From Macrostomum lignano (taxonomy: Eukaryota): 64,000 bases of DNA. Within the stretch, counting starts at the first letter, position 1. Each line of letters starts with the position of its first letter. Positions 26,928 through 60,906 of this stretch are shown in pieces. The stretch lies in NCBI GenBank assembly GCA_002269645.1, contig NIVC01000004.1, positions 124,001-188,000 on the forward strand, written 5' to 3'. Made by a program: the position numbers and the translations under genes. The notes under the pieces were generated by a model. That model saw nothing but the letters and a program-made list of their open reading frames with translations, was not told the DNA's origin and did not search any database.

Positions 26928-29701
26928 CTCTGGGATTTCAAAAAAGAAAGAGCGGGCCAGCAATAACCCGGCTCCCGGTCCACTCCATTCTCTTTTCCAT
27001 GGCCGAACTCCAAGACTCAAATCGACTGCGAGAGCCGGCACAGCGGCAGAGGCGCTGGACAGCGGCGTCCGCCTTCTGTCTGAACTCGGCGCCAACGACG
27101 AGGACCTGGACGACGCCGGCATCGACACCTCCGCGACTGCCGCTATGGCCGCCGCTGACGAAGAGGACGAAGTTTCGAAGATGGTGGCGCCGTCGGCCGC
27201 GGCAGCTGTGCCCAAGCCGATCCGAGGCCACCTGATCGGCCGCCAGGGCACCTGGCAGCTGCACATCGACGCCGCAGCGCTTCGCTTCGTCCGTCAGCCG
27301 CCAGCGGCGTCTAAAGAATCAGCAAAGGATGACAATGAATCCTTCGTGTGCAGCTTTGACGACACAGTCGGTGTCGGCTTCATCAGCGATGGCGGCTGTC
27401 GGAGCCGCTACCTCTGCGCCTTCCGCTACGTCAGGCGGCCGGTCGCCGCGCCGGGCAGGCCGAGCGGGCCGCGCCAGCGCAGCCTCGTCTTGTTTCGCAT
27501 CGTGCAGCCGGCGGACCCGCCCGGCGTTGCCCTGGTCGGCCGGCTCTGCTCGCAGGCGGTTGCCCGATCGATGGGGCGCGAACCCGGGCCGCCTGGAAAA
27601 CGGCCGCTGCTGGTGAGCGGGCGGGGATTTCAATTTTTAAAGCAAACCCCCCCCCCCAAGCCTCGCACGATCTGGGCGCTCATGGCGCCCGTCTTTAGTC
27701 ATCCACGTCCAGAGCTCAGGCCCAGGGTGAGACGGGAGACCTGTACCTACCGGTAGTAATTACAACAATAACAAAATACACTGTTAGATAATCACAGCAA
27801 AGAACTGCCCAAGCTTCAAGCTTTGAGCCTCGAAACACAGACTGACTGAGCTTCAATTTCTTGCAGGGCAGGAGGCTTGACTGCTGTGCTTCGACTGCGC
27901 GTTCGAAGTCGACCATTTTCATTTCAAAATTTTGACCTTACATTAGAAATTTCATTAGAAATGACATTAAAAATGACAGTAGATGTGAGCTCAATGCAGG
28001 CTTTTACTGGGCCATTAACCAAGTCCTATCTCGCTTTCTTGTCTCATCTCGTCTCGTCCGCCCTCTGACCTGAAGGTGCTGCTGAACCCGCGCAGCGGCC
28101 AGGGCCGGGCGGACAAGCTGTTCAGGGAGACGGCCGAGCCGCTGCTGGAGGAGGCGGGGCTGGCGCACAGGCTGGTCCGCACCGAGTCCGCCGGCCACGC
28201 CACGCGGCTGCTGCGCGACTCGCCGGCCGAGGAGCTGCTGAGCTACTCCGGGCTCGTCATTGTCAGCGGCGACGGGCTGCTGTACGAAGCGCTGAACGGT
28301 CTGGCCGGCCGGCCGGACTGCCTCCAGCTGCTTCGCCGGCTGCCCTTCGGCGTCCTGCCGGCTGGCGGCGGCAACGCGGTGGCCGCGTCGTTGGCGCACG
28401 CCAACGGCGACTGCCTCGATCGCGAATTTGCAGTGACGGCCGCCTTCAACTTGGCCAAGGCGCGGCCTCGCCCGGTCGATCTGGCGCTTGTTGAAGCGGC
28501 CTCAGGCGCCAGCTACCTGGCCTGCCTGTCCGTTAACTACGGGTTGCTGGCCCAGGTGGACCTGGAGAGCGAGCGCTACCGCTTCCTAGGCGGGGCTCGG
28601 TTCGCCCTGGCATTCGGAATTCGACTGGCTGCGCCCGGCGGCCTGCGAGTATACAGAGCCAGGTGCGGGTTAGGGCCAGGTGCGGGTCAGGGCCAGGTGC
28701 GGGTCAGGGCCCGGTGCGGGTCAGGGCCAGGTGCGGGTCAGGGCCCGGTGCGGGTCAGGGCCAGGTGCGGGTCAGGGCCAGGTGCGGGTCAGGGCCAGGT
28801 GCGGGTCAGGGCCAGGTGCGGGTCAGGGCCAGGTGCGGGTCAGGGCCAGGTGCGGGTCAGGGTCAGGTGCGGGTCAGGGCCAGGTGCGGGTCAGGGCCAG
28901 GTGTTAAGCTACTTGACTTCTTCATTCATGAGCCAGGCGCACAGGTGCACAATTGTTCAGACGAGGTGTACATGCAGCTAGGTTAACTATTCAGTCTAGT
29001 GCTGGGTTCAATTGCAGCCAGGTACAAAGGTTGTGAGCTGTGCGCCACTACCTGCTGCCCGATTTGTGTGACAGATTTGCGTTACAAGTAGGCTCTGTTC
29101 GACCTCACTAGTGCGAATAGAAGCACTAAGCAGGCTCGGAGAAACTGAATCTTGGCTCGCACCAAACCACGCCTCTCGCAGACTCTCCTACTTGCCGGCA
29201 GAAGTTGCCGAAGCTAAAGACGCTGAAACCGCCGACGTCAGCAACGACAACGGCGACGACAACAACCGGAAGCCGCTGGCCTCGCTGAAGCGTCATTTGC
29301 CGGCCAGTCTGTCGGACCCGTTGCCTAGCAACGCAGGCTGGGTGACGGAGGAAGCGGACTACCTGCTGGTGCTGGCCAGCCTGCACTCGCACCTGGCTAC
29401 CGATAATTTCTACGCGCCCCCGTGCCGGCCGGACGACGGGCGCATCTACGTGACCTGGGTGGCGGCCGGGGTGTCCAAGGTCGACCTGCTGCGCATGTTC
29501 CTCAGTGTCGGCGACGGCGGCCACTTTCGAGCGCCGGCGTTCCGCTGCGCGGCGGCCCGCGCCTTCCGCCTGGAGCCGCTGGACGACGGCGGGCCGGTGT
29601 GCATCGACGGCGAGACGGCGCCATGCGAGGCGATGCAGGTGGAGCTGCTACCTCGCCTCGGCTTGGCGCTGACGCCGGCGCGAATCGGGATAACGAATTG
29701 A
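26928..29701 (+). CDS. SPHK: sphingosine kinase
   Basis: Exons ~26928-27612, 28076-28662, 29182-29701; motifs RPLL|VLLNPRSGQG, SGDGLLYEALNGL, PAGGGN, VDLESERYRFLG, VYRAR|LSYLP, IDGE. Possible first exon 26603-26643 (ATG CGT..TCC AG|gtgagc) is phase compatible. Confidence 0.93.
28658..28905 (+). repeat. 17-bp repeat made of the SPHK splice donor (CAG|GTGCGGGTCAGGGC), 15 copies
   Basis: GT at 28663 then every 17 nt to 28901. Confidence 0.95.
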
Positions 29702-31465: not shown

Positions 31466-32412
31466 TTTTGTCTGCTCAGAGGAGTCTGCGGGATGGGAAC
31501 CTCTCGCTGGTTGTAACGCAATGGTATATTATTCCCGGCGCAAGTCGTGTTATTCCAATATCATGCATCCCGACTGCAGAAAAGTGCATTGACTAGTGTT
31601 TCCACATAGGCTTGTTTATAATATATAATTATAAATAATTTGATAATTAATTTTTGGGTCACCTAATAAACTCGTTAAACTAATGTTTTTGTCTATGGAC
31701 AATAGCACGCATCCCTGTCAATGCTTGTCAATGCCGCTTAAAGTGCGCCGGGGTGCACACAGCCTCAGGCCGCGCTGACAAGTGGCGCCTCAACCGATTG
31801 CAACACAGGTGATTTGACAACAGTCTTGCAGTCTAACGTGCAAGAGCTACAGATTCAGCTTCTATAACTGCATATTTCAAAACTGGCAGTTCTATTGAAG
31901 ACAATGAATGCATCGAATGAAGACTAAAGGCGATCGCATTGAAGATAAAAACGTATACAGTGCAGCTGAAAATAAACAAACTAGTTTATTGTTAGCCTAA
32001 ATCAATAAATTATTTAAAGAATACAAAAGAACAAACATCGAGCATCCATAGCTAACATATTTCACTGATTTAATTTAAAGCGTATTAAAGCGTATGAGCC
32101 GATGCCCAAGCAGCCAGTGGGCTCGTATATTTAATTTAAGGATTAACCAGTGCTTTGCACTTGAATGCTTAGCTGAGACAATAGTAAAAAGTTTTGTTTT
32201 AAAAAGCAACATTGTTTGTACATAAAAAAATGCTGTACCGAGATGAACTTTTACAATCCTGCAACCTGCAAGTGTTATTAGATACTTTCTATCATGTTCA
32301 ATCAGCCCCAACAAACAGGCAGATGGTCCGCCCTAAACTCTCGGTTATCCCCCCTACTTCTGCATGTCAGAATGCGACGAAATTGGGAACTTTTATTGGC
32401 AATTCTGAGCAG

Positions 32413-33663
32413 TCAGGGCAGCACGAATACCAGCAGCACGCAGCCGATCTGAATGATTGACCCGTGCCGCAGCACCGCCCCGTCCTCGCAACCACCGCCG
32501 CCGCCGCCGCCAAACAGTGCCACAGGCGAGCAAAGGCAGCGGCACCCGGCGCCGCCGCCGCTGCCGCCTCCCGACAGTCGGAACCGGTGCCCCGCAGAGT
32601 CTAGCGCCGCCAGCGTTGCGGCTGCAGCCGACTGGGACTGGCGCTGCGCCGATCCCGTCAACCCGCCGCCGCGCCGCCCGGCCGCGGACTTCGCCGCCCC
32701 TTTCTGGCCGTCCTTTGCCCCGCTAAAGCCGACGCCGGCCGCCCAGGTCCGCTTGGCAGAGGGAGCGAAGAGCTGGCCATCCACCACGGTGCCGTGCTGG
32801 CTGTAGTTGATGAGCTCGAACACCCGGCCAGTTGGGTCGTAGTGGATCGTGGCGTGGCAGGAGGCGGCGGCGTACACGCAGTCGGAGCCCCACTGCTCAG
32901 CCAGGGCGATGTCGTTGCCGGCCAGCAGCCCGACAGTCGCCCCGGTGCGGGTCAGGGCGACCGGCGGCCCGCCGGCGGCCGGTGCGGCGCAGTGCAGGAT
33001 GGCCAGCGGTGGCGCCTCTGACAATTCCAAAGCCGATGCCAGTGGCTCCGCCGTGCGCGCAGGCGGCGGCGTGGCTTCTCGCTCGCCGGAGGACGACTCG
33101 GACAGGAAGCTATCAGCTGCGGCGGCTCGGCGCTTGCTCCGCTTCTGTCGCCTTTTGCCGCTGTACAGATCTTTGACCACCTGCGGCACTGGGGGCTGCG
33201 ACTGGGCCGCACCGCCCGGACGGTCCAACCGCCACGCTGGCAGGAAGCCGTCAATGCCGGCCGCTTTGGCCACAGCAGCGGCAGCGGCGCCAGCGCCTGT
33301 CGGTGGAGCTTCGTCTGGCGGCGCGGCGGCGGCGGCCTTTGTCAGCGCCATTGCCAGCTCGCAACGCAGCGCTACTCGGCGCCGCTTCTGGCGCTTCTCC
33401 TTGACGCCGCCTGAACCGGAAGCGGCCTCCGCATCGGCCGGCGGATGCGCCGGACACCGGAAGTCAAGACCGGAAGGCGGCGGCCGTTCGAGTCCAAGGC
33501 AGGCCAGGTGCTGGGCGGCCGGGCACAGGTCGCACTGGATGAGGGCGCCGGTTGCGCAGCCGTCGCCGCACATTTTGCATTGGCGCAGCGGCAGCGCCGG
33601 CAGCTTCCACTTGGGGCGGCCAGCCTGCGGCTGCTGCTCCGCTTGCTGCTGCAGTTGCGGCTG
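32413..33663 (-). CDS. PHF12: PHF12-like PHD finger + FHA domain, single terminal exon lacking a start codon
   Basis: CKMCGDGC..LIQCDLCP..HLACL..FRCPAH (PHD2 of PHF12), HATIHYD..FELINYSQHGTVVDG (FHA), LRHGSIIQIGCVLLVF*; phase-0 acceptor at 33664. Confidence 0.82.
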   Translation of the reverse strand, partial: QPQLQQQAEQQPQAGRPKWKLPALPLRQCKMCGDGCATGALIQCDLCPAAQHLACLGLERPPPSGLDFRCPAHPPADAEAASGSGGVKEKRQKRRRVALRCELAMALTKAAAAAPPDEAPPTGAGAAAAAVAKAAGIDGFLPAWRLDRPGGAAQSQPPVPQVVKDLYSGKRRQKRSKRRAAAADSFLSESSSGEREATPPPARTAEPLASALELSEAPPLAILHCAAPAAGGPPVALTRTGATVGLLAGNDIALAEQWGSDCVYAAASCHATIHYDPTGRVFELINYSQHGTVVDGQLFAPSAKRTWAAGVGFSGAKDGQKGAAKSAAGRRGGGLTGSAQRQSQSAAAATLAALDSAGHRFRLSGGGSGGGAGCRCLCSPVALFGGGGGGGCEDGAVLRHGSIIQIGCVLLVFVLP

Positions 33664-33819
33664 CTGCGGGGGTTGAAAATTATGGGGGAGATGGGGGAGA
33701 AAATATTCTCATAACTGGGAGGATTCGGCCGCTTAGAATTTTCTGCTGATGTTTATATTTCCTGTTCTAAGAAATTTTCTCTCTGCTACAAGTTTTTAAA
33801 GAATCTCTCGTATTCTTGC

Positions 33820-33960
33820 TGCTCGGAGAATTCCCCAAAGGATCTGGCTGCTCGGAGAATTCCCCAAAGGATCTGGCTGCTCGGAGAATTCCCCAAAGGA
33901 TCTGGCTGCTCGGAGAATTCCCCAAAGGATCTGGCTGCTCGGAGAATTCCCTAAAGGACA
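33820..33960. repeat. 29-bp tandem repeat (GGCTGCTCGGAGAATTCCCCAAAGGATCT)
   Basis: About 4.5 copies between CHMP5 3' end and PHF12 exon. Confidence 0.9.
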
Positions 33961-34263
33961 GCTGGAGTATTTAATAAATAATTAAAGTCATTAAACAATT
34001 AAAGTCAGTGCGTCAGATCTTTTAATGAATGGCAATTTATTAATAAAATTTATTGCAAGGTTAGCAAAAACGAAAATTAAACTAAATGCCAAAGCAACGC
34101 TTTGACTGAAAACTGAAATGCAACCAAAAAGCGTTAAACATTATTCAGCTGTGCTGAAAGCTCGGAGGTTTGAAAAACGGGTAGGCAGAAGTTTCAGAAT
34201 AGCAATTCCTGGTATTTGAAATGTCTCGCAAAAAATCTTGGACATAAAGTCTGCACGCGGAAT

Positions 34264-37200
34264 TCACTTGGCGCTGGCGGGAACCTTGGGCAGCCCGAAC
34301 TCATCCAGCTGCTGGTCTGAGGACTGCAATGCGAAGGAAGGATTGTAACGAATGGTTCCAATGCGAGCATCTAGAACTTTGGTAGGCACATAGATTGCGA
34401 GGTGAATATGCAGGTAGGCAGAGATTGGAAGGTGAATTTGCAGGTAGGCAGGTAGATTGGAAGGTGAGTATGCAGGTAGACAGGTAGATTGGAAGGTGAA
34501 TTTGCAGGTAGACAGGTAGATTGGAAGGTGAGTATGCAGGTAGACAGGTAGATTGGAAGGTGAATATGCAGGTAGGCAGAGATTGGAAGGTGAATATGCA
34601 GGTAGACAGGTAGATTGGAAGGTGAGTATGCAGGTAGACAGGTAGATTGGAAGGTGAAAATGCAGGTAGGCAGAGATTGGAAGGTGAATATGCAGGTAGA
34701 CAGGTAGATTGGAAGGTGAGTATGCAGGTAGACAGGTAGATTGGAAGGTGAGTATGCAGGTAGACAGGTAGATTGGAAGGTGAGTATGCAGGTAGACAGG
34801 TAGATTGGAAGGTGAGTATGCAGGTAGACAGGTAGATTGGAAGGTGAATTTGCAGGTAGACAGGTAGATTGGAAGGTGAGTATGCAGGTAGACAGGTAGA
34901 TTGGAAGGTGAATATGCAGGTAGGCAGAGATTGGAAGGTGAATATACAGGTAGACAGGTAGATTGGAAGGTGAGTATGCAGGTAGACAGGTAGATTGGAA
35001 GGTGAGTATGCAGGTAGACAGGTAGATTGGAAGGTGAGTATGCAGGTAGACAGGTAGATTGGAAGGTGAATTTGCAGGTAGACAGGTAGATTGGAAGGTG
35101 AATTTGCAGGTAGACAGGTAGATTGGAAGGTGAATTTGCAGGTAGACAGGTAGATTGGAAGGTGAATATGCAGGTAGGCAGAGATTGGAAGGTGAATATG
35201 CAGGTAGACAGGTAGATTGGAAGGTGAGTATGCAGGTAGACAGGTAGATTGGAAGGTGAAAATGCAGGTAGACAGGTAGATTGGAAGGTGAATATGCAGG
35301 TAGACAGGTAGATTGGAAGGTGAATATGCACATTTAAGTACTCTAGACAAGCAGATATGCAGGTTGGAAGGCAACTCACAGCGGGCGCCGATGCGGGCGC
35401 GCTGTCAGCGCCGGGCACTCGGCTCGGCACGCCAGGCGCACTGAGCGCCTCGTCCAGGTAAGACTGCCCGCCGATGTCCTCGGCGCCGAGGGCGTCCAGC
35501 TCGGCCTCCAGATCGGACTCGTCCACATCGGGCATGCCGTAGCTGCGGCCCATGATCTCGTTGATTTCGTTGGACTGATCAACAAAGCTTTCGAGATCGT
35601 CCTGAATTGTTGTCAGTGGTTAATGCCAATCGTGAGTCGGGAATCGGCCATAAACTGAATCAAAATCAGCCATAAACTGTCGGGAATCAGCTATAAACTG
35701 AGTCAGGAATCAGCCATAAACTGAATCAAAATCAACCATAAACTGAGCCAGAATCAGTCATAAACTGAGTCAGGAATCAGTCATAAACTGAGTCAGGAAT
35801 CAGTCATAAACTGAGTCAGGAGTCAGTCATAAACTGAGTCAGGAATCAGTCATAAACTGAGTCAGGAATCAGTCATAAACTGAGTCAGGAGTCAGTCATA
35901 AACTGAGTCAGGAATCAGTCATAAACTGAGTCAGGAATCAGTCATAAACTGAGTCAGGAGTCAGTCATAAACTGAGTCGGGAATCGGCCATAAACTGAGT
36001 CGGAATCAGCCATAAACTGAGCCAAAATCAGCCATAAACTGAGCCAGAATCAGCCATAAACTGAGCCAGAATCAGCCATAAACTGAGCCAGAAAATCAGC
36101 CATAAACTGAGCCAGAATCAGCAATAAACTGAGCTGGCAACCAGCCATAAACTGAGCCAGAATCAGCCATGAACTGAGCCAGAATCAGCCATAAACTGAG
36201 CCAGAATCAGCCATAAAATGAGCCAGAATCAGCCATAAACTGAGCCAGAATCAGCCATAAAATGAGCCAGAATCAGCCATATACTGAGCCAGAATCAGCC
36301 ATATACTGAGCCAGAATCAGCCATATACTGAGCCAGAATCAGCCATAAGCTTAGGTCTTTGGCTATGCTACCTGCAGGTCCTCAATTTTGTCCAAGTTGA
36401 CTCCGCGGTAGCTCTTCTTGAACTCCTTGACCCCGCCTCGCATAGCTTCCACTGTGGTTTTTGTATCCTTGACTGTCTGTATAGCGAAATTAGTCTGCTC
36501 CAAGTTGAAGCCCTGCTGCATCAGCTGCTCCCGCTGCTGCTCATAGCTTCGTTTCTGTTTGAGCACTCGCAGCGCCTTCTGCTTAACAAGATTCTTGGAC
36601 GGGCCGTCGCGCATTTTGGCCATCTGTTCGCGATAGCCAGAGAGCTCCTGATCCAGCTTGGCGATCTTCTTCTCTATGGACTCGCCCCGGCTGTCAATCT
36701 GGGTAAAAAAATTTAAAAAAATGGTTTAAGTACAAGATCATAGAAAGGGATAAATAGCTTTATTAATCTAATATATATAGCTTTTCTTAGCTATAGGCCT
36801 ATTATATAAAGAAGCCATATTACATGTTATAACTTTAATAATTTTTTTGTACAAAGCTATTATTAGTAATAAATATGCTAAAATCCATAGTCAGGATCAT
36901 GGCACGCCTACGCCAAAACTAGTGATGGATCCGAATATTTGGATTTGGAATCCGAATTCAAAAAAATGTGTCACTTTTTTAGAAATACAAATGTTTCAGA
37001 TTTGAAGTTTTTTCCAAATGTGCTTCCAAATATGAAAAAATCAAGAAACCTAAACAAATTCAGGTTTGTAAAAGAAATAAAACTTTTGAAATAAGAAAGT
37101 ATATTAAAAAAAAACAAAAACACAAGAATCAGTAATTTCCATTTGAAAAATACCAGTAAAACATATTTGAATCTGTTTCATAAAAAATGCAATGTTAACA

Positions 37201-39272
37201 TAGGTTTGAATTAAAAAAAGATATTAATACATTTGCAAACAAAAAAGAGCAATCCTTTGGTTTACAATCACCTATTTTGCCAGTTTTGGTTTGCAATCAC
37301 CTTCTATTTTGCTAGTTTTGGTTTACGATCACCTTCTATTTTGCCAGTTTTGGTTTATGATCACCTTCCATTTTGCACACTCATTGCAGCACAAAAATGG
37401 TGTGTTCAAAACTGGCTGACAAAAAATATGCAAAATTGAAAGTGCAGGAGCAGGATGATACTTTATATATTAGCTTTGGTATACAATTATTTGAATGTGT
37501 AACACACAAAAATGATCCTGAACTGAAGCTGGGTTAAAAATAATATTTATGTAACGCTCATGCACTTAAGTTAAAGTAATTTGCCAGCATGTGCATGTGT
37601 AGAAGTGATCGTGAACTGAAGATGAGGGGGGTGCATAGCAATGAAAATTAATTACAAAGATGTCAGACAAGCGACTATTTGACCTGGATTTTGATGCCCT
37701 CACTCTGAAATGAGCAGCGAGCAATTTTCCATTTTTTGAGACTATTTCTCATTTGACACACTTTCCTATAGCCAGTTTCAGTTTATAATCATTTCAATGG
37801 GAAACATACGTTTGGGTGATTGTAAACCAAAAGTGATATATAAGCTTCTAGCTCAAACTTTAGTATTTGACACATGGGACTATTTGACATTCTTACTTAT
37901 AGCTAGCTTTGGTTCATGATTGTTTTAATGGGCAACATGTGTAGGTGATTGTAAACTGAAGGTGATATATAAGCTACTAGCTCAAACTTTAGTACTTGAC
38001 ATATGGGACTATTTGACATGCTTTCTTACAGCTAGCTTTGGTTCATGATCATTTTAATAGGCAACATACGTGTGGATAATCATAAACTGAAGGTGAAATA
38101 TAAGCTACGACAGTCTTACCATCTTTTGAATAAACAAAATCAGTTTACCAACTTTTGATTTTGTTTAATTGGAAACCACATTTGGGTTTTATGTCTTACA
38201 ACTGTTTTTGGTAGTGATTGTCACTGTTTGAGATGATTGTCACTGTTTTAAGGTGAGTGTTAACCAAAGGAATGCCCAAAAAAGTATTAATAAAGAGAAA
38301 TTATAGGGCCTATGACTAATTTCCTATCTAAAAAAATTTTCATATATGAGCAAACCCTAGCAGCCACAAAGGTGGTAGCCTAAATGGCATACACATGCAT
38401 AAAGCATCCACCTCCACTAGACAGCCAATACCCAAATAGCCCCCTTTGCATTAAAGACAATTGGCCCTTGCAGGCTTGCACAAACCAATAGGCAATACAA
38501 TGCACCAGCATAATGTATATCTAACCCTTTTTTGTGCCAGAATTTGCTATGAAAAAGGCCATCTTCCTAATTTTGGGCAAAAAAATTGTTTACAAACACT
38601 AAATAATTCAAGCTTTCATTAAAGATATAGTAGTAAGCCTTACTTGGCTAGACCTAGGCTAGATAATTAATAGGCTAATACAAAAAAATCTCTTTATTAA
38701 AACAGAAATTTGGATTTTTCTATATAACTTATTTATGTTATATAATTTATGATCTATACATTTGTTATACTCTAAGACTAAATACAAATATATAACCTTT
38801 AGCCTAGGCTACCAAGGTCTATTTACATAGTCAAAGATAGACTTATCACCTAGGCCTATACCATAGGCAGCATAGGCTATGGCTATAAATTATTTATATG
38901 ATATTCTGATTTTTATAATGATATTAAAAATATTAGATAAAAAATTAAAATATAGGGGCATAACAAATCAGGCAGCACTTATTTTTAAATTATAATTATA
39001 AATTCTAGGCCTACAATATGATAAATATCTGATATCAACTAATATAACTTATATAAAAGATAATTACTATCTTGCTCTGTGCCAAAAATTAGTCAGAAAT
39101 CCAACATCAGAATCATTCTAAGACTGATATTGGTGTCATGTCACCTGAACCAGGCAGGCCAGGGTCACCAGGACAGTAGGACACTTACATTTGTGATTGC
39201 ATCATTCAAATTAGCTTTTGCAGGCTGTTTTCCACCACGGCCACCTCCAGATGAACCAAAAAGCCGCTGCAT
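34264..39272 (-). CDS. CHMP5: ESCRT-III subunit CHMP5/Vps60
   Basis: Exons 39272-39189 (MQRLFG..AITN), 36698-36372 ([18 protein letters not shown]), 35601-35380 ([15 protein letters not shown]), 34323-34264 ([14 protein letters not shown]); all phase 0, GT-AG. Confidence 0.96.
34395..35330. repeat. 32/30-bp minisatellite in CHMP5 intron 3
   Basis: GCAGGTAGACAGGTAGATTGGAAGGTGAGTAT units with a shorter variant interspersed. Confidence 0.96.
35630..36350. repeat. 22-23-bp minisatellite in CHMP5 intron 2
   Basis: CATAAACTGAGCCAGAATCAGC / CATAAACTGAGTCAGGAATCAGT units. Confidence 0.95.
37816..38107. repeat. ~128-bp diverged tandem duplication
   Basis: GGTGATTGTAAAC..GTGATATATAAGCT..TAGCTCAAACTTTAGTA occurs twice plus a partial third copy. 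Confidence 0.8.
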
Positions 39273-41183
39273 TGAAACTGTTAAGAAAATTGATTGAGGT
39301 ACAAGCCAAGGCTATAGTCGCCTATAGTTTGCTTCCACTATTATTCACACTTGTATATATAACCAACCAAGTTTGTCACACTTTGATATTTAAGCAACAA
39401 TTTTTAACTTTACCGTATAACTGATCAAGGAAGTTGTCTAGCTAGTATAGGTAGGCCTAAATGGCAGCACTATACACAGTCAGCGTTAGCATTTCGAACG
39501 GCAATGGCATGAGACTTGATCAGTCAGGTAGGTCAGTAAGGGCCAGGCTACGCGACGGTCGCCGATCCATGCCGAAAGACATTTAAAACGATCATCCGAT
39601 CTTTAACAAAATTGACCTGCCTTTTAAAGCATCTTTGTAGCTATTTTTTATGCACCCGTTTGGCGTCGAATGAGCTCTAATTTATAAAAAATTAAAAACC
39701 TTTTTGAGATACATCTATTCGGAAACCAGTCATTTCGACGAAAGCCATTAAACGCCCTCCCCTGGTATCAATTTTCATGACAACACTGATTTCTCATAAA
39801 CTTTGAAGCGTCTCGATTGAGCAGTCTAATAAAGCGTGTTTAAAAAGTGCTTCCAATTAATTATACGCATACCTCCAGCTGTATAAAGCTGCGTTTGGCG
39901 ATACTGTTGTATCTTTGGGTAAATGCATGCAACGAACAGACTTTATAATTATCGGTGTAACCAAGCCCAACAATCAATTCGATGTCTGACAAATATTTAC
40001 TTTTACATTTTACCGACGTTCAGTCGTTACTGTCGACGTAATGTAAAAGTACATATTTGTTAGCGACGTCAAAAGACGTCGGAAACATTGGCAGCTATTG
40101 TGGTGGGAAGCATTATTTTATCAGTGCAGTAGCAGTTAAAGTCCTGGTTATGGTACAGTAGGGATGTTTCTGTTTATAGACTCGGGTTGTGCGAGGGAAG
40201 TTTATAGAACCTCGCCATATTTGGCATGCGGGGAGAGCGTATCAGCAGTAGCAGCGTCGGCATCTTTGTTACCCCGTGCGATAAGTTGAGTGGACAGGTC
40301 CAAAACATCAGTACTTATGTATAATCTACAAGACCATGTAGTTGGATAGTTTGTGCAGGTCTTTGATAGTTCTCATCTCCTCAAAAGCAAACTTGAAGCT
40401 TAAATCAGCTCACACTGTCATGTCGGTTTGGCCATAAGTTAAGCTTGATTTATCATCATTGAAACAAACGAACTTTGTATATATTATTTATATCTTTCAT
40501 GCGACAGCAACCTGCATGGTCATTCCATTTACCAGACTCATGTCAGGCTACCAGCTTCTCTACAATTAGATCGAATCAACTTATTTAGCTTTCTAGAGAA
40601 GGACGCATAAAATTTGTGAGTTTAAAACATGGTTGTGTTGCCACGTTAGAATTCCAGAATCGCATTGAACAGTGCTGCTGCAGTAAAAATAATTTGTTTT
40701 AACAAACACCTGAGCCATTCTCCTAACTATAAGTAATTGAGTGGAATATAGCTGCACCAAATCCAGAATAATATTACAGTAATCGGAGTTCGGTCAAACT
40801 GAAACCGTCTCATCACCGAAAGCATTCAATGATGCTGGCTTTTTCGCTAATGAACCTGCACCAATTGATTGACACATGCTGTTGTGCCAGACACAGCTTT
40901 TCAACAAAGAATCTTTCCTGCCGCTAAAACCCATAAATGCATCCGAACGATGGCTTCCCTAAACTTCCGGGGCGGATAGTGGAAGGCGCAGGTGACGGGG
41001 CGGATGGTATTAAAATTGCATCAATCTTTTATCACCTTGCCAATCTACTGCAGAAATTAACTCTGAAGGCATAAAAGGCATAAAAGCACCAGAGCAGAAC
41101 AGCAAAAACGAGCTGCTCAATAGTGAACTGACTCGCACTTTCTCATCATAATTTTTCTCGCCCGCAATTCAACCAGCTCAAGA

Positions 41184-42122
41184 ATGTATCAAACCCAAAA
41201 GCAACTCAAGGCGCTGCTATATTGCCTGCTGCTGATGGCGCTCCCTGCCTCGGCCACGATCGATGCTGTGCATTCCGATCGGCAGATGGAGGTCTTCACT
41301 CAAGTGTCGCTTTCTGGCGCCCTATCGAGCTGCCGCCGCCTGCTGCTTATGCGCGTGCGGAGCCAGCAGGACTGCCTCATGCAGTGGATGAGGCTGCAGC
41401 AGATGGGAGCTCAGCCCACCTTTATCCACTACACACCTTCGACTGACTCGAGAGGCTGCGAGATCTCCGTCTGGTGCGACCAGCTGCTGTTGAACGAGTC
41501 GGAGACGCGCACCGCTCTGCTGCCGGCGTCTCAAAGTCCGCCGAGACTCGTGCTGTTCGCGGTCAAGTCCGGTAGCCAAGTCAACGTCCTGGACTCGTTC
41601 CTCACGCCCGTCGACTGCAACCGGTCTCTCCTCGTGTCGCCGATCGTCGGACCGCCTCCGCTCGACTTCTGGCGCTCGTGTTGGCTCGACCGACTTCCGG
41701 ATCTCGTGAGACTCGTGTCCGGCAACACGATCTCGGTCGAGCTGCTCAAGAACGGCGTCACGGCGCTGAAGATCTCGTTCGACGCCAGGTTCTCAGGACT
41801 GAATTCGACGAACTGGTTCAGCAAGGACAGGCTGGTCGCCAGCGAGCCGGACTTGGGTCTGGAAAACCAGACATTCAACTACTTCTCCGTTGCTGGTCAC
41901 GTGGATCCCGACGGGCTTAGTCGGTCATTCTTCATAAATATGGCTTACGGCGGCTGCTCAGGTGATGCTGGAGTTTTTGTTGTTACGTAAAAGCTCGACA
42001 TTTGTTCGTGGGCTAAAGCAGGCAGTGGCACGGCTCAGCCGAAAATTCTCTACAATTTGAAGGCCGGTCTTTGGGAGAACAATGCGAATCTGGCAGATCA
42101 CATGCTGATTACTGTTGCCTGA
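41184..42122 (+). pseudogene. secreted protein paralog A with in-frame TAA at 41988-41990
   Basis: Signal-like N-terminus; core nearly identical to paralogs B/C; homology continues in frame for 43 codons after the stop (KLDICSW..LYNLKAGLW..LADHMLITVA*). Confidence 0.75.
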
Positions 42123-44340: not shown

Positions 44341-45343
44341 TCAGGCCACATAGACGAGCATGTAGTCAGCCAGCTGCACGTAGTCCTTCCAAAGACCGGC
44401 CTGCAAGTTGTACAGAATTCTGGGCAGAGCCGTGGTGCTGTTGCCGGTCAAGGCCCACGCACAAACATCATACTGGTCCATTACAGCCAGGACTCCAATG
44501 TCACCTGGGCAGCCACTGTACTCCATGTTTATGAAGAATGACCGACTAAGCCCGTCGGGATCCACGTGACCAGCAACGGAGAAGAAGTTGTATGTCTTGT
44601 TTTCCAGACCCAAGTCCGGCTCACTGGCGACCAGTCTGTTCTTGCTGAACCAGTTCGTCGCAGTCAGTCCTGAGAACCTGGCGTCGAACGAGATCTTCAG
44701 CGCCGTGACGCCGTTCTTGAGCAGCTCGACTGAGATCGTGTTGCCGGACACGAGTCTCACGAGATCCGGAAGTCGGTCGAGCCAACACGAGCGCCAGAAG
44801 TCGAGCGGAGGCGGTCCGACGATCGGCGACACGAGGAGAGACCGGTTGCAGTCGACGGGCGTGAGGAACGAGTCCAGGACGTTGACTTGGCTACCGGACT
44901 TGACCGCGAACAGCACGAGTCTCGGCGGACTTTGAGACGCCGGCAGCAGAGCGGTGCGCGTCTCCGACTCGTTCAACAGCAGCTGGTCGCACCAGACGGA
45001 GATCTCGCAGCCTCTCGAGTCAGTCGAAGGTGTGTAGTGGATGAAGGTGGGCTGAGCTCCCATCTGCTGCAGCCTCATCCACTGCATGAGGCAGTCCTGC
45101 TGGCTCCGCACGCGCATAAGCAGCAGGCGGCGGCAGCTCGATAGGGCGCCAGAAAGCGACATCTGTGTGAAGACCTCCGTCTGCTGATGGGACTTCACAG
45201 CATCGGCCTTTGCCGCGGTGGCTAGGAGCGCAATCAGCAGCTGGGCGCAGAGAAGATCTGCAAGCTTGCTAAGGAGGCAGCGTGCATTGCGTGAGATCGT
45301 TATCAAGTTACAAAAGTATTCAGACACGAGAAACTCACCTCAT
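44341..45343 (-). CDS. secreted protein paralog B (uncharacterised, Cys-containing)
   Basis: join(45343-45339 ATGAG, 45268-44341) over a 70-nt GT-AG phase-2 intron gives MSKLADLLCAQLLIALLATAAKA signal peptide; open ORF to TGA. Confidence 0.85.
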
Positions 45344-47999: not shown

Positions 48000-49032
48000 T
48001 CAGGCCACATAGACGAGCATGTAGTCAGCCAGCTGCACGTAGTCCTTCCAAAGACCGGCCTGCAAGTTGTACAGAATTCTGGGCAGAGCCGTGGTGCTGT
48101 TGCCGGTCAAGGCCCACGCACAAAAATCATAATTGTCCATTACAGCCAGGACTCCAACATCAACAGGGCAGCCACCATACACCATGTTTATGAAGAATGA
48201 CCGACTAAGCCCGTCGGGATCCACGTGACCAGCAACGGAGAAGTAGTTGAAGTTCCTGGAGGCCAGACCCAAGACCGGCTCACTCCCGACCAGCCTGTCC
48301 TTGCTGAACCAGTTCGTCGCATTCAGTCCTGAGAACCTGGCGTCGAACGAGATCTTCAGCGCCGTGACGCCGTTCTTGAGCAGCTCAACCGAGATCGAGT
48401 TGCCGGACACGAGTCTCACGAGATCCGGAAGTCGGTCGAGCCAACACGAGCGCCAGAAGTCGAGCGGAGGCGGTCCGACGATCGGCGACACGAGGAGAGA
48501 CCGGTTGCAGTCGACGGGCGTGAGGAACGAGTCCAGGACGTTGACTTGGCTACCGGACTTGACCGCGAACAGCACGAGTCTCGGCGGACTTTGAGACGCC
48601 GGCAGCAGAGCGGTGCGCGTCTCCGACTCGTTCAACAGCAGCTGGTCGCACCAGACGGAGATCTCGCAGCGTCTCGAGTCAGTCGAGGGTGCGTAGTGGA
48701 CGAAGGCGGGGTCAGCTGCCTCCCTCTTCAGCTTCATCCACTGCTCCAGGCATTTCTGCAGACTTCGCGTGCGCGTCTGCAGCAGGCGGCGGCAGCTCGA
48801 GAGGGCGCCAGAGAGCGGCAACCGTCGGAAAACCCCCAGCTGACCGCCGCTTTCTGCGACATCGCCCCAGAGCATCAGCAGCAGCAGGGTGGAGATCAGC
48901 AGCAGGTTTCCATACGGCGGGCTGAAAGGCGGTTTTAGCATATAAAATTTCTTCCATAAATTATAGTCCAAGCAAAAAGCTCAAGCGCTTGAATAAGTTT
49001 CAAAGCTTAGCTTACGTTAATCTCGGCATCAT
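48000..49032 (-). CDS. secreted protein paralog C
   Basis: join(49032-49016, 48921-48000) over a 94-nt GT-AG phase-2 intron gives MMPRLTPPYGNLLLISTLLLLMLWG signal peptide; core and tail match paralog B. Confidence 0.85.

Positions 49033-51525: not shown

Positions 51526-60906
<9,381 letters not shown>

What the first reader, a model, noticed from the sequence alone, without database searches (positions are those of the whole stretch)
32413..35380. Start-less PHF12 exon directly behind CHMP5: chimeric splice, trans-splicing or truncation
The PHD2-FHA exon opens at a phase-0 acceptor (33664). Upstream, an in-frame TGA occurs before any ATG, and the first ATG (33573) falls after the first PHD cysteine. 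Only ~600 bp separate it from the CHMP5 stop on the same strand, leaving no room for the PHD1 half of PHF12. The CHMP5 exon-3 donor (35379) is also phase 0, so skipping CHMP5 exon 4 would give an in-frame ESCRT-III-PHD-FHA fusion. Alternatives are an operon-like SL trans-spliced cistron, distant upstream exons interleaved with CHMP5, or a duplicated fragment.
Basis: partly seen in the sequence, partly recalled or inferred. Interest (0 to 1): 0.72.

Follow-up and report, generated by a model that had tools for sequence, protein, structure and literature searches.

The report
Start codon supplied by spliced leader
A flatworm (Macrostomum lignano) gene for a shortened PHF12-like chromatin protein looks start-less most likely because this animal's trans-spliced leader RNA ends in AUG and supplies the start codon, probably with the gene as second cistron of an operon behind CHMP5, which is ordinary biology for this species.

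Summary
On the minus strand a 416-codon intronless ORF (33663-32413) encodes a PHF12-type PHD2 finger and an FHA-like domain. It opens at in-frame CAG acceptors behind a pyrimidine tract. An in-frame TGA lies upstream, and the first genomic ATG falls inside the PHD finger. The ORF starts 600 bp after the CHMP5 stop.

The window is Macrostomum lignano Mlig_3_7. [quoted passage not shown] SL addition at any of four clustered acceptors puts that ATG in frame.

The transcript-based GenBank model is 5'-partial and begins right after one of these CAGs. The canonical two-PHD PHF12 gene, elsewhere in the assembly, has the same Met-less annotation, beginning exactly after a consensus TTGCAG acceptor.

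Best reading: a lineage-specific, N-terminally truncated PHF12 paralog that gets its AUG from the SL, probably as the downstream cistron of a CHMP5 operon. The repeat-adjusted spacer is about 160-190 nt.

The CHMP5-PHD-FHA fusion is in frame but has no support. I could not retrieve SL-containing reads, so SL use is inferred. Interest is low: a new member of a known kind.

The parts
39189..39272 (-). CHMP5 coding exon 1 (ATG at 39272; 28 codons; donor GTAAGT)
   Evidence: GenBank CDS range
36372..36698 (-). CHMP5 exon 2 (109 codons)
   Evidence: Snf7 Pfam 1.4e-38
35380..35601 (-). CHMP5 exon 3 (74 codons). Phase-0 donor GTGAGT at 35379.
34264..34323 (-). CHMP5 exon 4 (19 codons plus TGA at 34266-34264). 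Its acceptor is TTGCAG.
34021..34054 (-). CHMP5 poly(A) signals: AATAAA at 34054 and 34041, ATTAAA at 34026
33814..33958 (.). 29-nt tandem repeat, 5 copies, in the spacer between the two genes. The second assembly copy has 3 more units (87 nt).
33709..33711 (-). In-frame TGA closing the reading frame upstream of the acceptor
33667..33705 (-). Polypyrimidine tract (31 of 39 nt are pyrimidines) ahead of the acceptor cluster
33646..33666 (-). Cluster of four in-frame CAG acceptors (first exon bases 33663, 33660, 33648, 33645). CTGCAG| before 33648 fits the published SL-acceptor motif [T/C]TNCAG. The GenBank CDS starts at 33645.
32413..33663 (-). Intronless PHF12-like ORF (416 codons plus TGA). 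Predicted protein is M plus 410 to 416 residues once the SL ATG is added.
33445..33579 (-). PHD finger of the PHD2 type, with all eight Zn ligands intact (C4HC2H, ending CPAH). It is the only PHD pattern in the window.
33571..33573 (-). First in-frame genomic ATG. It lies between PHD Cys1 and Cys2, so it cannot start a protein with an intact PHD finger.
32755..32955 (-). FHA-like core (aa 237-303; ...FELINYSQHGTVVDG...)
32416..32544 (-). Conserved PHF12 C-terminal block (CRC...AVLRHGSIIQIGC...FVLP)
32392..32397 (-). AATAAA poly(A) signal 16 nt after the PHF12-like stop codon

Best explanation
The ORF at 33663-32413 (minus strand) is a real, expressed Macrostomum lignano gene. It encodes an N-terminally truncated, lineage-specific paralog of PHF12 that keeps only the pre-PHD2 loop, PHD2, the FHA-like domain and the C-terminal block.

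Its mRNA is made by spliced-leader trans-splicing onto one or more of four tandem in-frame CAG acceptors (33664 to 33646). The 35-nt M. lignano SL ends in ...TTGCATG, so the SL itself supplies the cap and the initiator AUG, giving M-QPQLQQ... or M-QAEQQ....

The gene lies 600 bp behind the CHMP5 stop on the same strand. That is about 340-365 nt from the CHMP5 poly(A) signals and about 160-190 nt once tandem repeats are subtracted. It is therefore probably the downstream cistron of a two-gene CHMP5 operon, with the polycistronic precursor resolved by CHMP5 3'-end formation and SL addition.

Shown: the sequence anatomy, the homology, the organism, the SL sequence (from the literature), the 5'-partial transcript-based gene model, and the same pattern at the canonical paralog.

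Inferred: that SL is added at this site, that the SL AUG is the start used, and that the two genes share one promoter.
For: (1) Organism. The encoded protein is found only on GCA_002269645.1 contigs NIVC01000004.1 (100% identical to the window) and NIVC01001887.1. NIVC is the M. lignano Mlig_3_7 assembly.

(2) Known biology.
- The M. lignano SL is CGGTCTCTTACTGCGAAGACTCAATTTATTGCATG. [quoted passage not shown] The operon criterion is a repeat-adjusted spacer below 1 kb, with a mode near 100 bp. The acceptor motif is [T/C]TNCAG (PMC8629364).
- All reported flatworm SLs end in ATG, which can serve as initiator. In S. mansoni more than 40 cDNAs need it (Cheng 2006, via PMC9851317 and PMC12582326).
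- For Macrostomum the final ATG is described as a likely translation start (PMC10468722).

(3) Coding sequence extends upstream of the first ATG. PHD Cys1 and the conserved pre-PHD2 motif LPALPLRQC (family consensus LVPLPAKxC) precede ATG 33573. An in-frame TGA closes the frame at 33711.

(4) Acceptors. A pyrimidine tract is followed by four CAGs, all phase 0. Ten of the eleven AGs between the stop and the PHD finger are phase 0.

(5) Gene model. The GenBank annotation is built only from transcripts, with the SL trimmed and boundaries cut at SL-read peaks. Its CDS here is 5'-partial and starts at 33645, immediately after CTGCAGCAG|. The annotated transcript therefore begins there, with no upstream exon.

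(6) Internal control. The canonical M. lignano PHF12 (PAA85827.1, PAA52181.1, both 'partial') starts without Met at the first base after TTGCAG|. It has an in-frame TGA 18 codons upstream and no in-frame ATG in between. Its residues before the first internal Met (..SGSLM) align with the family N-terminal motif SGGLM.

(7) A functional gene, not debris. All 39 columns that are invariant across the nine-sequence alignment (eight PHF12 proteins plus this one) are retained. AATAAA follows 16 nt after the stop. The stop-free frame has P of about 5e-4.

(8) Spacer length is 338-366 nt, or 160-188 nt after removing tandem repeats.
Against: - I could not retrieve any SL-containing read or SL-bearing transcript. 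Exact look-ups of M-started versions (411, 412, 416 and 417 aa) found nothing, and two further homology searches found nothing.
- The best-placed acceptor (CCGCAG| at 33664) misses the published motif at one position. Only CTGCAG| (33649) fits it.
- The annotated start at 33645 lies in a CAG-rich tract, so a start next to an AG is not improbable by chance.
- An in-frame SL AUG is expected by chance in about one third of acceptors (28% in S. mansoni).
- Operon status rests only on distance and orientation. A separate promoter within the 600-bp spacer, with an outron, is not excluded. About 60% of SL-spliced genes in this species are not in operons.
- The two assembly copies are identical across the CDS, so there is no comparative signal.
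Confidence: 0.7

Rival explanations
1. The gene is SL trans-spliced and started by the SL AUG, but it is monocistronic. It has its own promoter in the roughly 350-nt spacer (or within the CHMP5 3' region) and makes a short outron that the SL replaces. There is no operon with CHMP5.
For: About 60% of SL-spliced M. lignano genes are not in operons. The canonical PHF12 paralog shows the same SL-type start with no same-strand gene called within 8 kb upstream. CHMP5 has strong poly(A) signals before the spacer.
Against: The repeat-adjusted spacer of about 160-190 nt falls in the operon mode of the published distance distribution. The spacer is mostly 3'UTR and tandem repeat, whose copy number differs between the two assembly copies.
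Confidence: 0.2
2. The acceptor is used in cis. Either CHMP5 exon 3 (donor at 35379, phase 0) skips exon 4 to make a Snf7-PHD-FHA fusion, or an unannotated upstream 5' exon carries the ATG.
For: The fusion is in frame (PASAPA-QPQLQQ). In parasitic flatworms acceptors are often shared between cis- and trans-splicing. A read-through operon precursor would put donor and acceptor on one RNA.
Against: - Transcript-based GenBank models keep the two genes separate, and the PHD-FHA CDS is 5'-partial starting mid-exon. That is impossible if an upstream exon were joined in the assembled transcript.
- CHMP5 exon 4 has a consensus TTGCAG acceptor closer to the donor.
- The fusion protein is not in the 15-billion-protein collection.
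- No PHF12 N-terminal or PHD1 coding potential exists anywhere in the 64 kb window.
- No plausible ATG-plus-donor mini-exon exists in the spacer.
Confidence: 0.06
3. A decaying duplicated fragment. On this reading it is a promoter-less, start-less PHF12 remnant, possibly a 5'-truncated retrocopy, that is transcribed only as CHMP5 read-through and is not translated into a functional protein. Alternatively it is translated from the internal ATG 33573 or from a non-AUG codon such as the in-frame CTG at 33654.
For: - An intact two-PHD PHF12 exists elsewhere.
- The window copy is intronless, whereas the canonical gene has two introns, one of them between PHD2 and FHA.
- It lacks the N-terminal helix motif, PHD1 and the MRG-binding region.
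- It has long Ala/Gly/Pro-rich low-complexity stretches and is 72% GC.
Against: - It shares only about 42-47% identity with its paralog, and only in short conserved blocks, yet keeps every invariant PHD2, FHA and C-terminal residue and a 416-codon open frame (P about 5e-4). This indicates long-term purifying selection.
- It has a tidy acceptor and a poly(A) signal 16 nt after the stop.
- Starting at ATG 33573 would delete a Zn ligand.
Confidence: 0.08

Closest known systems
Flatworm mRNAs whose initiator Met comes from the spliced leader's 3'-terminal AUG (Schistosoma mansoni; Cheng et al. 2006 J Biol Chem 281:733, as cited in PMC9851317 and PMC12582326)
   Same: The SL ends in AUG. The acceptor is in phase with an ORF that has no genomic start codon upstream of conserved residues.
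   Different: This is a different species and gene. Use of the SL AUG is shown experimentally in S. mansoni, whereas here it is inferred from sequence and from the 5'-partial gene model.
Macrostomum lignano operons as defined by Ustyantsev & Berezikov 2021 (PMC8629364)
   Same: The two genes are adjacent on the same strand. The repeat-adjusted spacer (about 160-190 nt) is well below the 1-kb threshold and near the 100-bp mode. Tandem repeats inflate the spacer. The downstream gene is conserved and opens at a CAG acceptor.
   Different: I could not check the SL-read support for the downstream gene, which that definition requires. Whether CHMP5 is itself trans-spliced is unknown.
Canonical M. 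lignano PHF12 (PAA85827.1 BOX15_Mlig009312g2, 594 aa; PAA52181.1 BOX15_Mlig014593g1, 593 aa)
   Same: It has the same species-specific signatures: a 2-residue insertion (..W..DC) in the FHA region, VGLL, NYSQ.GTVVDG, and a C-terminus ending VLRHGS...FVLP. It also has the same Met-less 5'-partial annotation beginning right after a CAG acceptor.
   Different: The canonical gene has the N-terminal motif, PHD1, a long linker and three exons. The window gene is intronless and starts about 28 residues before PHD2.
Human PHF12/Pf1 and yeast Rco1, scaffold of the SIN3B/Rpd3S deacetylase complex (PDB 8BPA; PMC10156912)
   Same: It has the atypical PHD2, which in human is structural and contacts the SIN3B CTD and HDAC. 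It also has the C-terminal FHA-like domain. Human PHF12 is the best PDB match, at 2.1e-15.
   Different: It lacks the N-terminal helix, PHD1 (the H3-tail reader), SID1/MRG-binding domain and the post-PHD2 SID2-like segment. It cannot form the histone-recognition module in the known way.

Membership tests
PHF12 / Pf1 / Rco1 family | Atypical second PHD finger (PHD2) preceded by the LVPLPxxxC loop and ending CPxH | tested here: met
   Pfam PHD 4.8e-07. All eight PHF12 queries match this finger better with their PHD2 than with their PHD1. All Zn ligands are invariant in alignment A1.
PHF12 / Pf1 / Rco1 family | C-terminal FHA-like domain plus the terminal HHGSxIKxGC block | tested here: met
   Human PHF12 816-870 aligns at 2.1e-15. 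Pfam FHA scores 19.4 bits, just under the 20.7 cut-off. Invariant residues are kept.
PHF12 / Pf1 / Rco1 family | N-terminal motif/helix and first PHD finger (PHD1) | tested here: not met
   There is only one PHD pattern in six frames of the 64 kb window. No tblastn hit to the N-terminal halves of eight PHF12 proteins falls outside the one exon.
PHF12 / Pf1 / Rco1 family | MRG-binding domain / SID1 (PF16737) between the two PHD fingers | tested here: not met
   There is no PF16737 hit, whereas 6 of the 10 relatives scanned have it. Only about 28 residues precede PHD2.
SL-AUG-initiated trans-spliced mRNA (flatworms) | The organism's SL ends in AUG | tested here: met
   The organism was identified by exact protein and contig match. 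The SL sequence comes from PMC8629364.
SL-AUG-initiated trans-spliced mRNA (flatworms) | A 3' splice acceptor in phase 0 with the ORF, with no genomic start codon upstream of conserved residues | tested here: met
SL-AUG-initiated trans-spliced mRNA (flatworms) | SL-containing reads or cDNA ending at the acceptor | not testable with these tools
   Only indirect evidence is available: the transcript-based, SL-trimmed GenBank model is 5'-partial and starts after CAG| at 33645. No SL-bearing transcript was retrievable.
M. lignano operon (Ustyantsev & Berezikov 2021 criteria) | Adjacent genes on the same strand with a repeat-adjusted intergenic distance below 1 kb | tested here: met
   The spacer is 338-366 nt from the poly(A) signals, or 160-188 nt after subtracting 178 nt of tandem repeats.
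M. lignano operon (Ustyantsev & Berezikov 2021 criteria) | The downstream gene is SL trans-spliced, or a polycistronic precursor is detected | not testable with these tools
   This needs RNA-seq reads or browser tracks.
CHMP5 / Snf7 (ESCRT-III), the upstream gene | Snf7 domain over the full protein | tested here: met
   PF03357 at 1.4e-38. The 230-aa product is identical to PAA62935.1 and PAA94648.1.

The most novel reading that the evidence does not exclude
The gene may have been born from a 5'-truncated, promoter-less and start-less duplicate of PHF12, possibly a retrocopy since it is intronless. It would have become expressible only because it landed behind CHMP5: operon read-through supplied transcription, and the AUG-ending spliced leader supplied cap and start codon. 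That would make it a concrete example of SL trans-splicing rescuing gene fragments. The product keeps the structural PHD2 and FHA but lacks the histone-reading module, so it could act as a competitor or variant scaffold for Sin3-HDAC complexes.
Probability: 0.3. Interest if true: 0.45.

Novelty: new member of a known kind. Interest (0 to 1): 0.2.

Why it matters
The main value is as a caution and a clean worked example. In flatworm genomes an ORF that opens at a phase-0 acceptor with no genomic ATG is the expected signature of an SL-AUG-initiated gene. It is not evidence of a chimeric transcript or a broken gene. GenBank models of M. lignano carry such genes as Met-less 'partial' CDSs.

A minor biological point: M. 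lignano has, beside a canonical PHF12, a conserved truncated PHD2-FHA paralog. If it is translated, it would lack the H3-tail and MRG15-binding module of the SIN3B/Rpd3S-type complex.

Tried and rejected
- Transcript evidence for the 5' end. A homology search with the full ORF returned only the window's own protein and a tick PHF12. A search with the N-terminal 109 aa and a search with a query stripped of low-complexity sequence both returned nothing. Exact look-ups of SL-AUG versions (417, 416, 412 and 411 aa), of the internal-ATG version (386 aa), of the CHMP5 fusion (627 aa) and of M plus canonical PHF12 all found nothing in the collection.
- Supplementary tables. Three M. lignano papers were searched for PHF12 and CHMP5, with no hits. 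No paper mentions both Macrostomum and PHF12.
- Comparative signal. The second assembly copy is identical across the CDS. It differs from the first only by 2 substitutions and an 87-nt repeat expansion in the spacer, so it is uninformative.
- SL RNA gene. There is none in the window.
- PHD1 or N-terminal exons in CHMP5 introns or upstream. None were found by PHD regex or by tblastn with eight PHF12 proteins.
- Locus-tag suffix. I first read the 'g2' suffix as an operon index and then rejected this. The two CHMP5 copies are g1 and g2 of one name prefix, and prefixes mark 95% sequence clusters.
- A mini first exon in the spacer. The ATGs at 34245, 34141, 33991 and 33712 lack a usable donor or frame.

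Full report
**What is there.** Read on the minus strand, the region holds two genes in tandem.

The upstream gene is a four-exon CHMP5/Snf7 gene:
- Coding exons lie at 39272-39189, 36698-36372, 35601-35380 and 34323-34264.
- The product is 230 aa, with a Pfam Snf7 match at 1.4e-38.
- Introns 2 and 3 are almost wholly minisatellites: a 22-mer in about 32 copies and a 32-mer in about 30 copies.
- Its stop is TGA at 34266-34264, followed by AATAAA at 34054 and 34041.

The downstream ORF starts 600 bp after the CHMP5 stop:
- A pyrimidine tract (31 of 39 nt) runs into cccccgCAG|CAG|CCGCAACTGCAG|CAG|CAAGCG.
- From 33663 a 416-codon frame runs without introns to TGA at 32415-32413, and AATAAA follows 16 nt later.
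- The frame is closed upstream by TGA at 33711-33709.
- The first in-frame ATG (33573) lies between the first and second cysteine of the PHD finger.

That includes the phase-0 CHMP5 exon-3 donor at 35379.

**The coding region is real.**
- Pfam finds a PHD finger (4.8e-07) and a sub-threshold FHA.
- The best solved-structure relative is human PHF12, at 2.1e-15, with PHD2 and the FHA region aligned.
- An exhaustive HMMER scan finds 146 relatives. Most are 600-1100 aa. Of the ten looked up, the named ones are PHF12 proteins or M. lignano hypothetical proteins, and the architecture is mostly PHD1, MRG-binding domain, PHD2 and FHA.
- In a nine-sequence alignment the window protein keeps every invariant PHD2, FHA and C-terminal residue.
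- A stop-free run of this length has P of about 5e-4 even at 72% GC.
- The finger is of the PHD2 type. Eight PHF12 queries all match it better with PHD2 than with PHD1, and the pre-PHD2 loop LPALPLRQC is conserved.
- Nothing resembling PHD1 or the PHF12 N-terminus occurs anywhere else in the 64 kb window.

**Which organism.** The exact protein occurs only on two contigs of GCA_002269645.1. NIVC01000004.1 is 100% identical to the window, and NIVC01001887.1 is a near-identical second copy. NIVC is the Macrostomum lignano Mlig_3_7 assembly. This changes the problem.

In M. lignano (PMC8629364):
- About 30% of genes receive one 35-nt spliced leader, CGGTCTCTTACTGCGAAGACTCAATTTATTGCATG.
- About 15% of genes lie in operons, mostly of two genes.
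- Spacers peak near 100 bp once repeats are subtracted.
- The enriched SL acceptor motif is [T/C]TNCAG.

The terminal ATG is a hallmark of flatworm SLs. It is documented as an initiator methionine in Schistosoma mansoni (Cheng et al. 2006, as cited in PMC9851317 and PMC12582326). For Macrostomum it is described as a likely translation start codon (PMC10468722).

**How the start-less exon most likely works.** SL addition at any of the four tandem CAG acceptors places the SL's ATG in frame. The first exon base would be 33663, 33660, 33648 or 33645, and the products would be M-QPQLQQQAEQQ..., M-PQLQQ..., M-QQAEQQ... or M-QAEQQ....

The GenBank annotation of this assembly is derived purely from transcripts. 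SL sequence was trimmed from reads, and transcript boundaries were cut at SL-read peaks. Its CDS here is 5'-partial, lacks Met, and begins at 33645, the base after CTGCAGCAG|. A 5'-partial call that starts mid-exon means the assembled transcript starts there and has no upstream exon. This is what an SL-AUG gene looks like after the whole SL, including the ATG, has been trimmed.

**An internal control supports this reading.** The canonical M. lignano PHF12 has two PHD fingers and three exons (PAA85827.1 and PAA52181.1, both flagged partial).
- It is annotated without Met, from the first base after a perfect TTGCAG| acceptor.
- An in-frame TGA lies 18 codons upstream, with no in-frame ATG between.
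- Its residues before the first internal Met (EFVPHPSPSGSLM) align with the family's N-terminal motif (..DLDTSGGLM).
- Translation of that gene must therefore also begin at an AUG that the genome does not encode at that spot.

**Operon.** The spacer from the CHMP5 poly(A) signals to the acceptor is 338-366 nt. Of this, 178 nt are tandem repeats, and one of these repeats differs by three units between the two assembly copies. The repeat-adjusted 160-188 nt and the shared orientation satisfy the published distance criterion for an operon. The criterion's other half, SL reads on the downstream gene, could not be checked. I rate SL-AUG initiation at about 0.7. Given SL use, I rate operon membership at about 0.7.

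**Origin and function (inferred).** The window protein and the canonical M. lignano PHF12 share derived characters that the other seven PHF12 proteins in the alignment lack:
- a two-residue insertion (..W..DC) in the FHA region;
- VGLL;
- NYSQ;
- a C-terminus ending VLRHGS...FVLP.

It is intronless, whereas the canonical gene has an intron between PHD2 and FHA. That fits a 5'-truncated retrocopy or intron loss, but I could not tell which.

Compared with human PHF12 in the SIN3B complex, it keeps the structural PHD2. It lacks the N-terminal helix, the H3-binding PHD1, SID1/MRG-binding domain and the SID2-like segment. Its role cannot be that of a full Rpd3S/SIN3B scaffold. A variant or competing subunit is speculation.

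**Rivals.**
- A CHMP5 exon-3 to PHD-exon fusion is in frame. Acceptors can be shared between cis- and trans-splicing in flatworms. Even so, the transcript-based models keep the genes apart, exon 4 has a consensus acceptor, and the fusion protein is absent from the collection.
- A dead fragment is unlikely given the conservation.
- Internal-ATG initiation would delete a zinc ligand.

**Limits.** No SL-bearing read or cDNA could be retrieved with these tools. No ortholog from another Macrostomum species was found, and the two assembly copies are too similar to inform. SL addition at this site is therefore inferred, not shown.

**Verdict.** The puzzle is resolved by known flatworm biology, and the result is a new member of a known kind, of low interest.

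Noticed in passing
window 35633-36348 and 34391-35330: CHMP5 introns 2 and 3 consist almost entirely of minisatellites: a 22-mer in about 32 copies, and a 32-mer in about 30 copies with a 254-bp higher-order period. They produce a strong local GC skew of 0.37.
   Followed up: partly
window 33814-33958; L002 equivalent: The 29-nt tandem repeat in the CHMP5/PHF12-like spacer has 5 copies here and 3 more (87 nt) in the second assembly copy. Apart from this the two copies differ by only 2 substitutions from the CHMP5 stop to past the PHF12-like stop.
   Followed up: yes
L003 7960-8040 and L004 7960-8040 (NIVC01000303.1, NIVC01003287.1): The canonical M. lignano PHF12 gene is deposited as a Met-less 'partial' CDS that starts exactly after a TTGCAG acceptor. 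UniProt models from the older assembly instead start at the internal Met, 12 residues into the GenBank CDS. This is probably a systematic annotation signature of SL-AUG genes.
   Followed up: partly
window 41184-41990 (+), 44341-45327 (-), 48000-48971 (-): Three paralogous single-exon ORFs of 268 to 328 aa share a long near-identical core (…CRRLLLMRVRSQQDCLMQWMRL…). The two longer ones have no Pfam match (the 268-aa ORF was not scanned), and their N-termini are hydrophobic. The first is not among the genes called in L001.
   Followed up: partly
window 57355-60906 (-): Exons of a laminin/netrin-type gene: Laminin_N at 1.5e-29 and Laminin EGF at 3.2e-18. The intervening sequence is filled with short tandem repeats that read open in several frames.
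   Followed up: partly
window 39986-40063: A 24-nt inverted repeat, 92% complementary with a 30-nt loop, lies about 700 bp upstream of the CHMP5 ATG and is flanked by GACGTC motifs. It could be a MITE end or a regulatory element.
   Followed up: no
window 27145-29701 (+): A convergent diacylglycerol-kinase-like gene (524 aa, DAGK_cat) ends about 2.7 kb from the PHF12-like 3' end, so the putative operon has only two cistrons. Its annotated ATG at 27145 is preceded by GC-rich sequence that looks coding, so the model may be N-terminally short.
   Followed up: no
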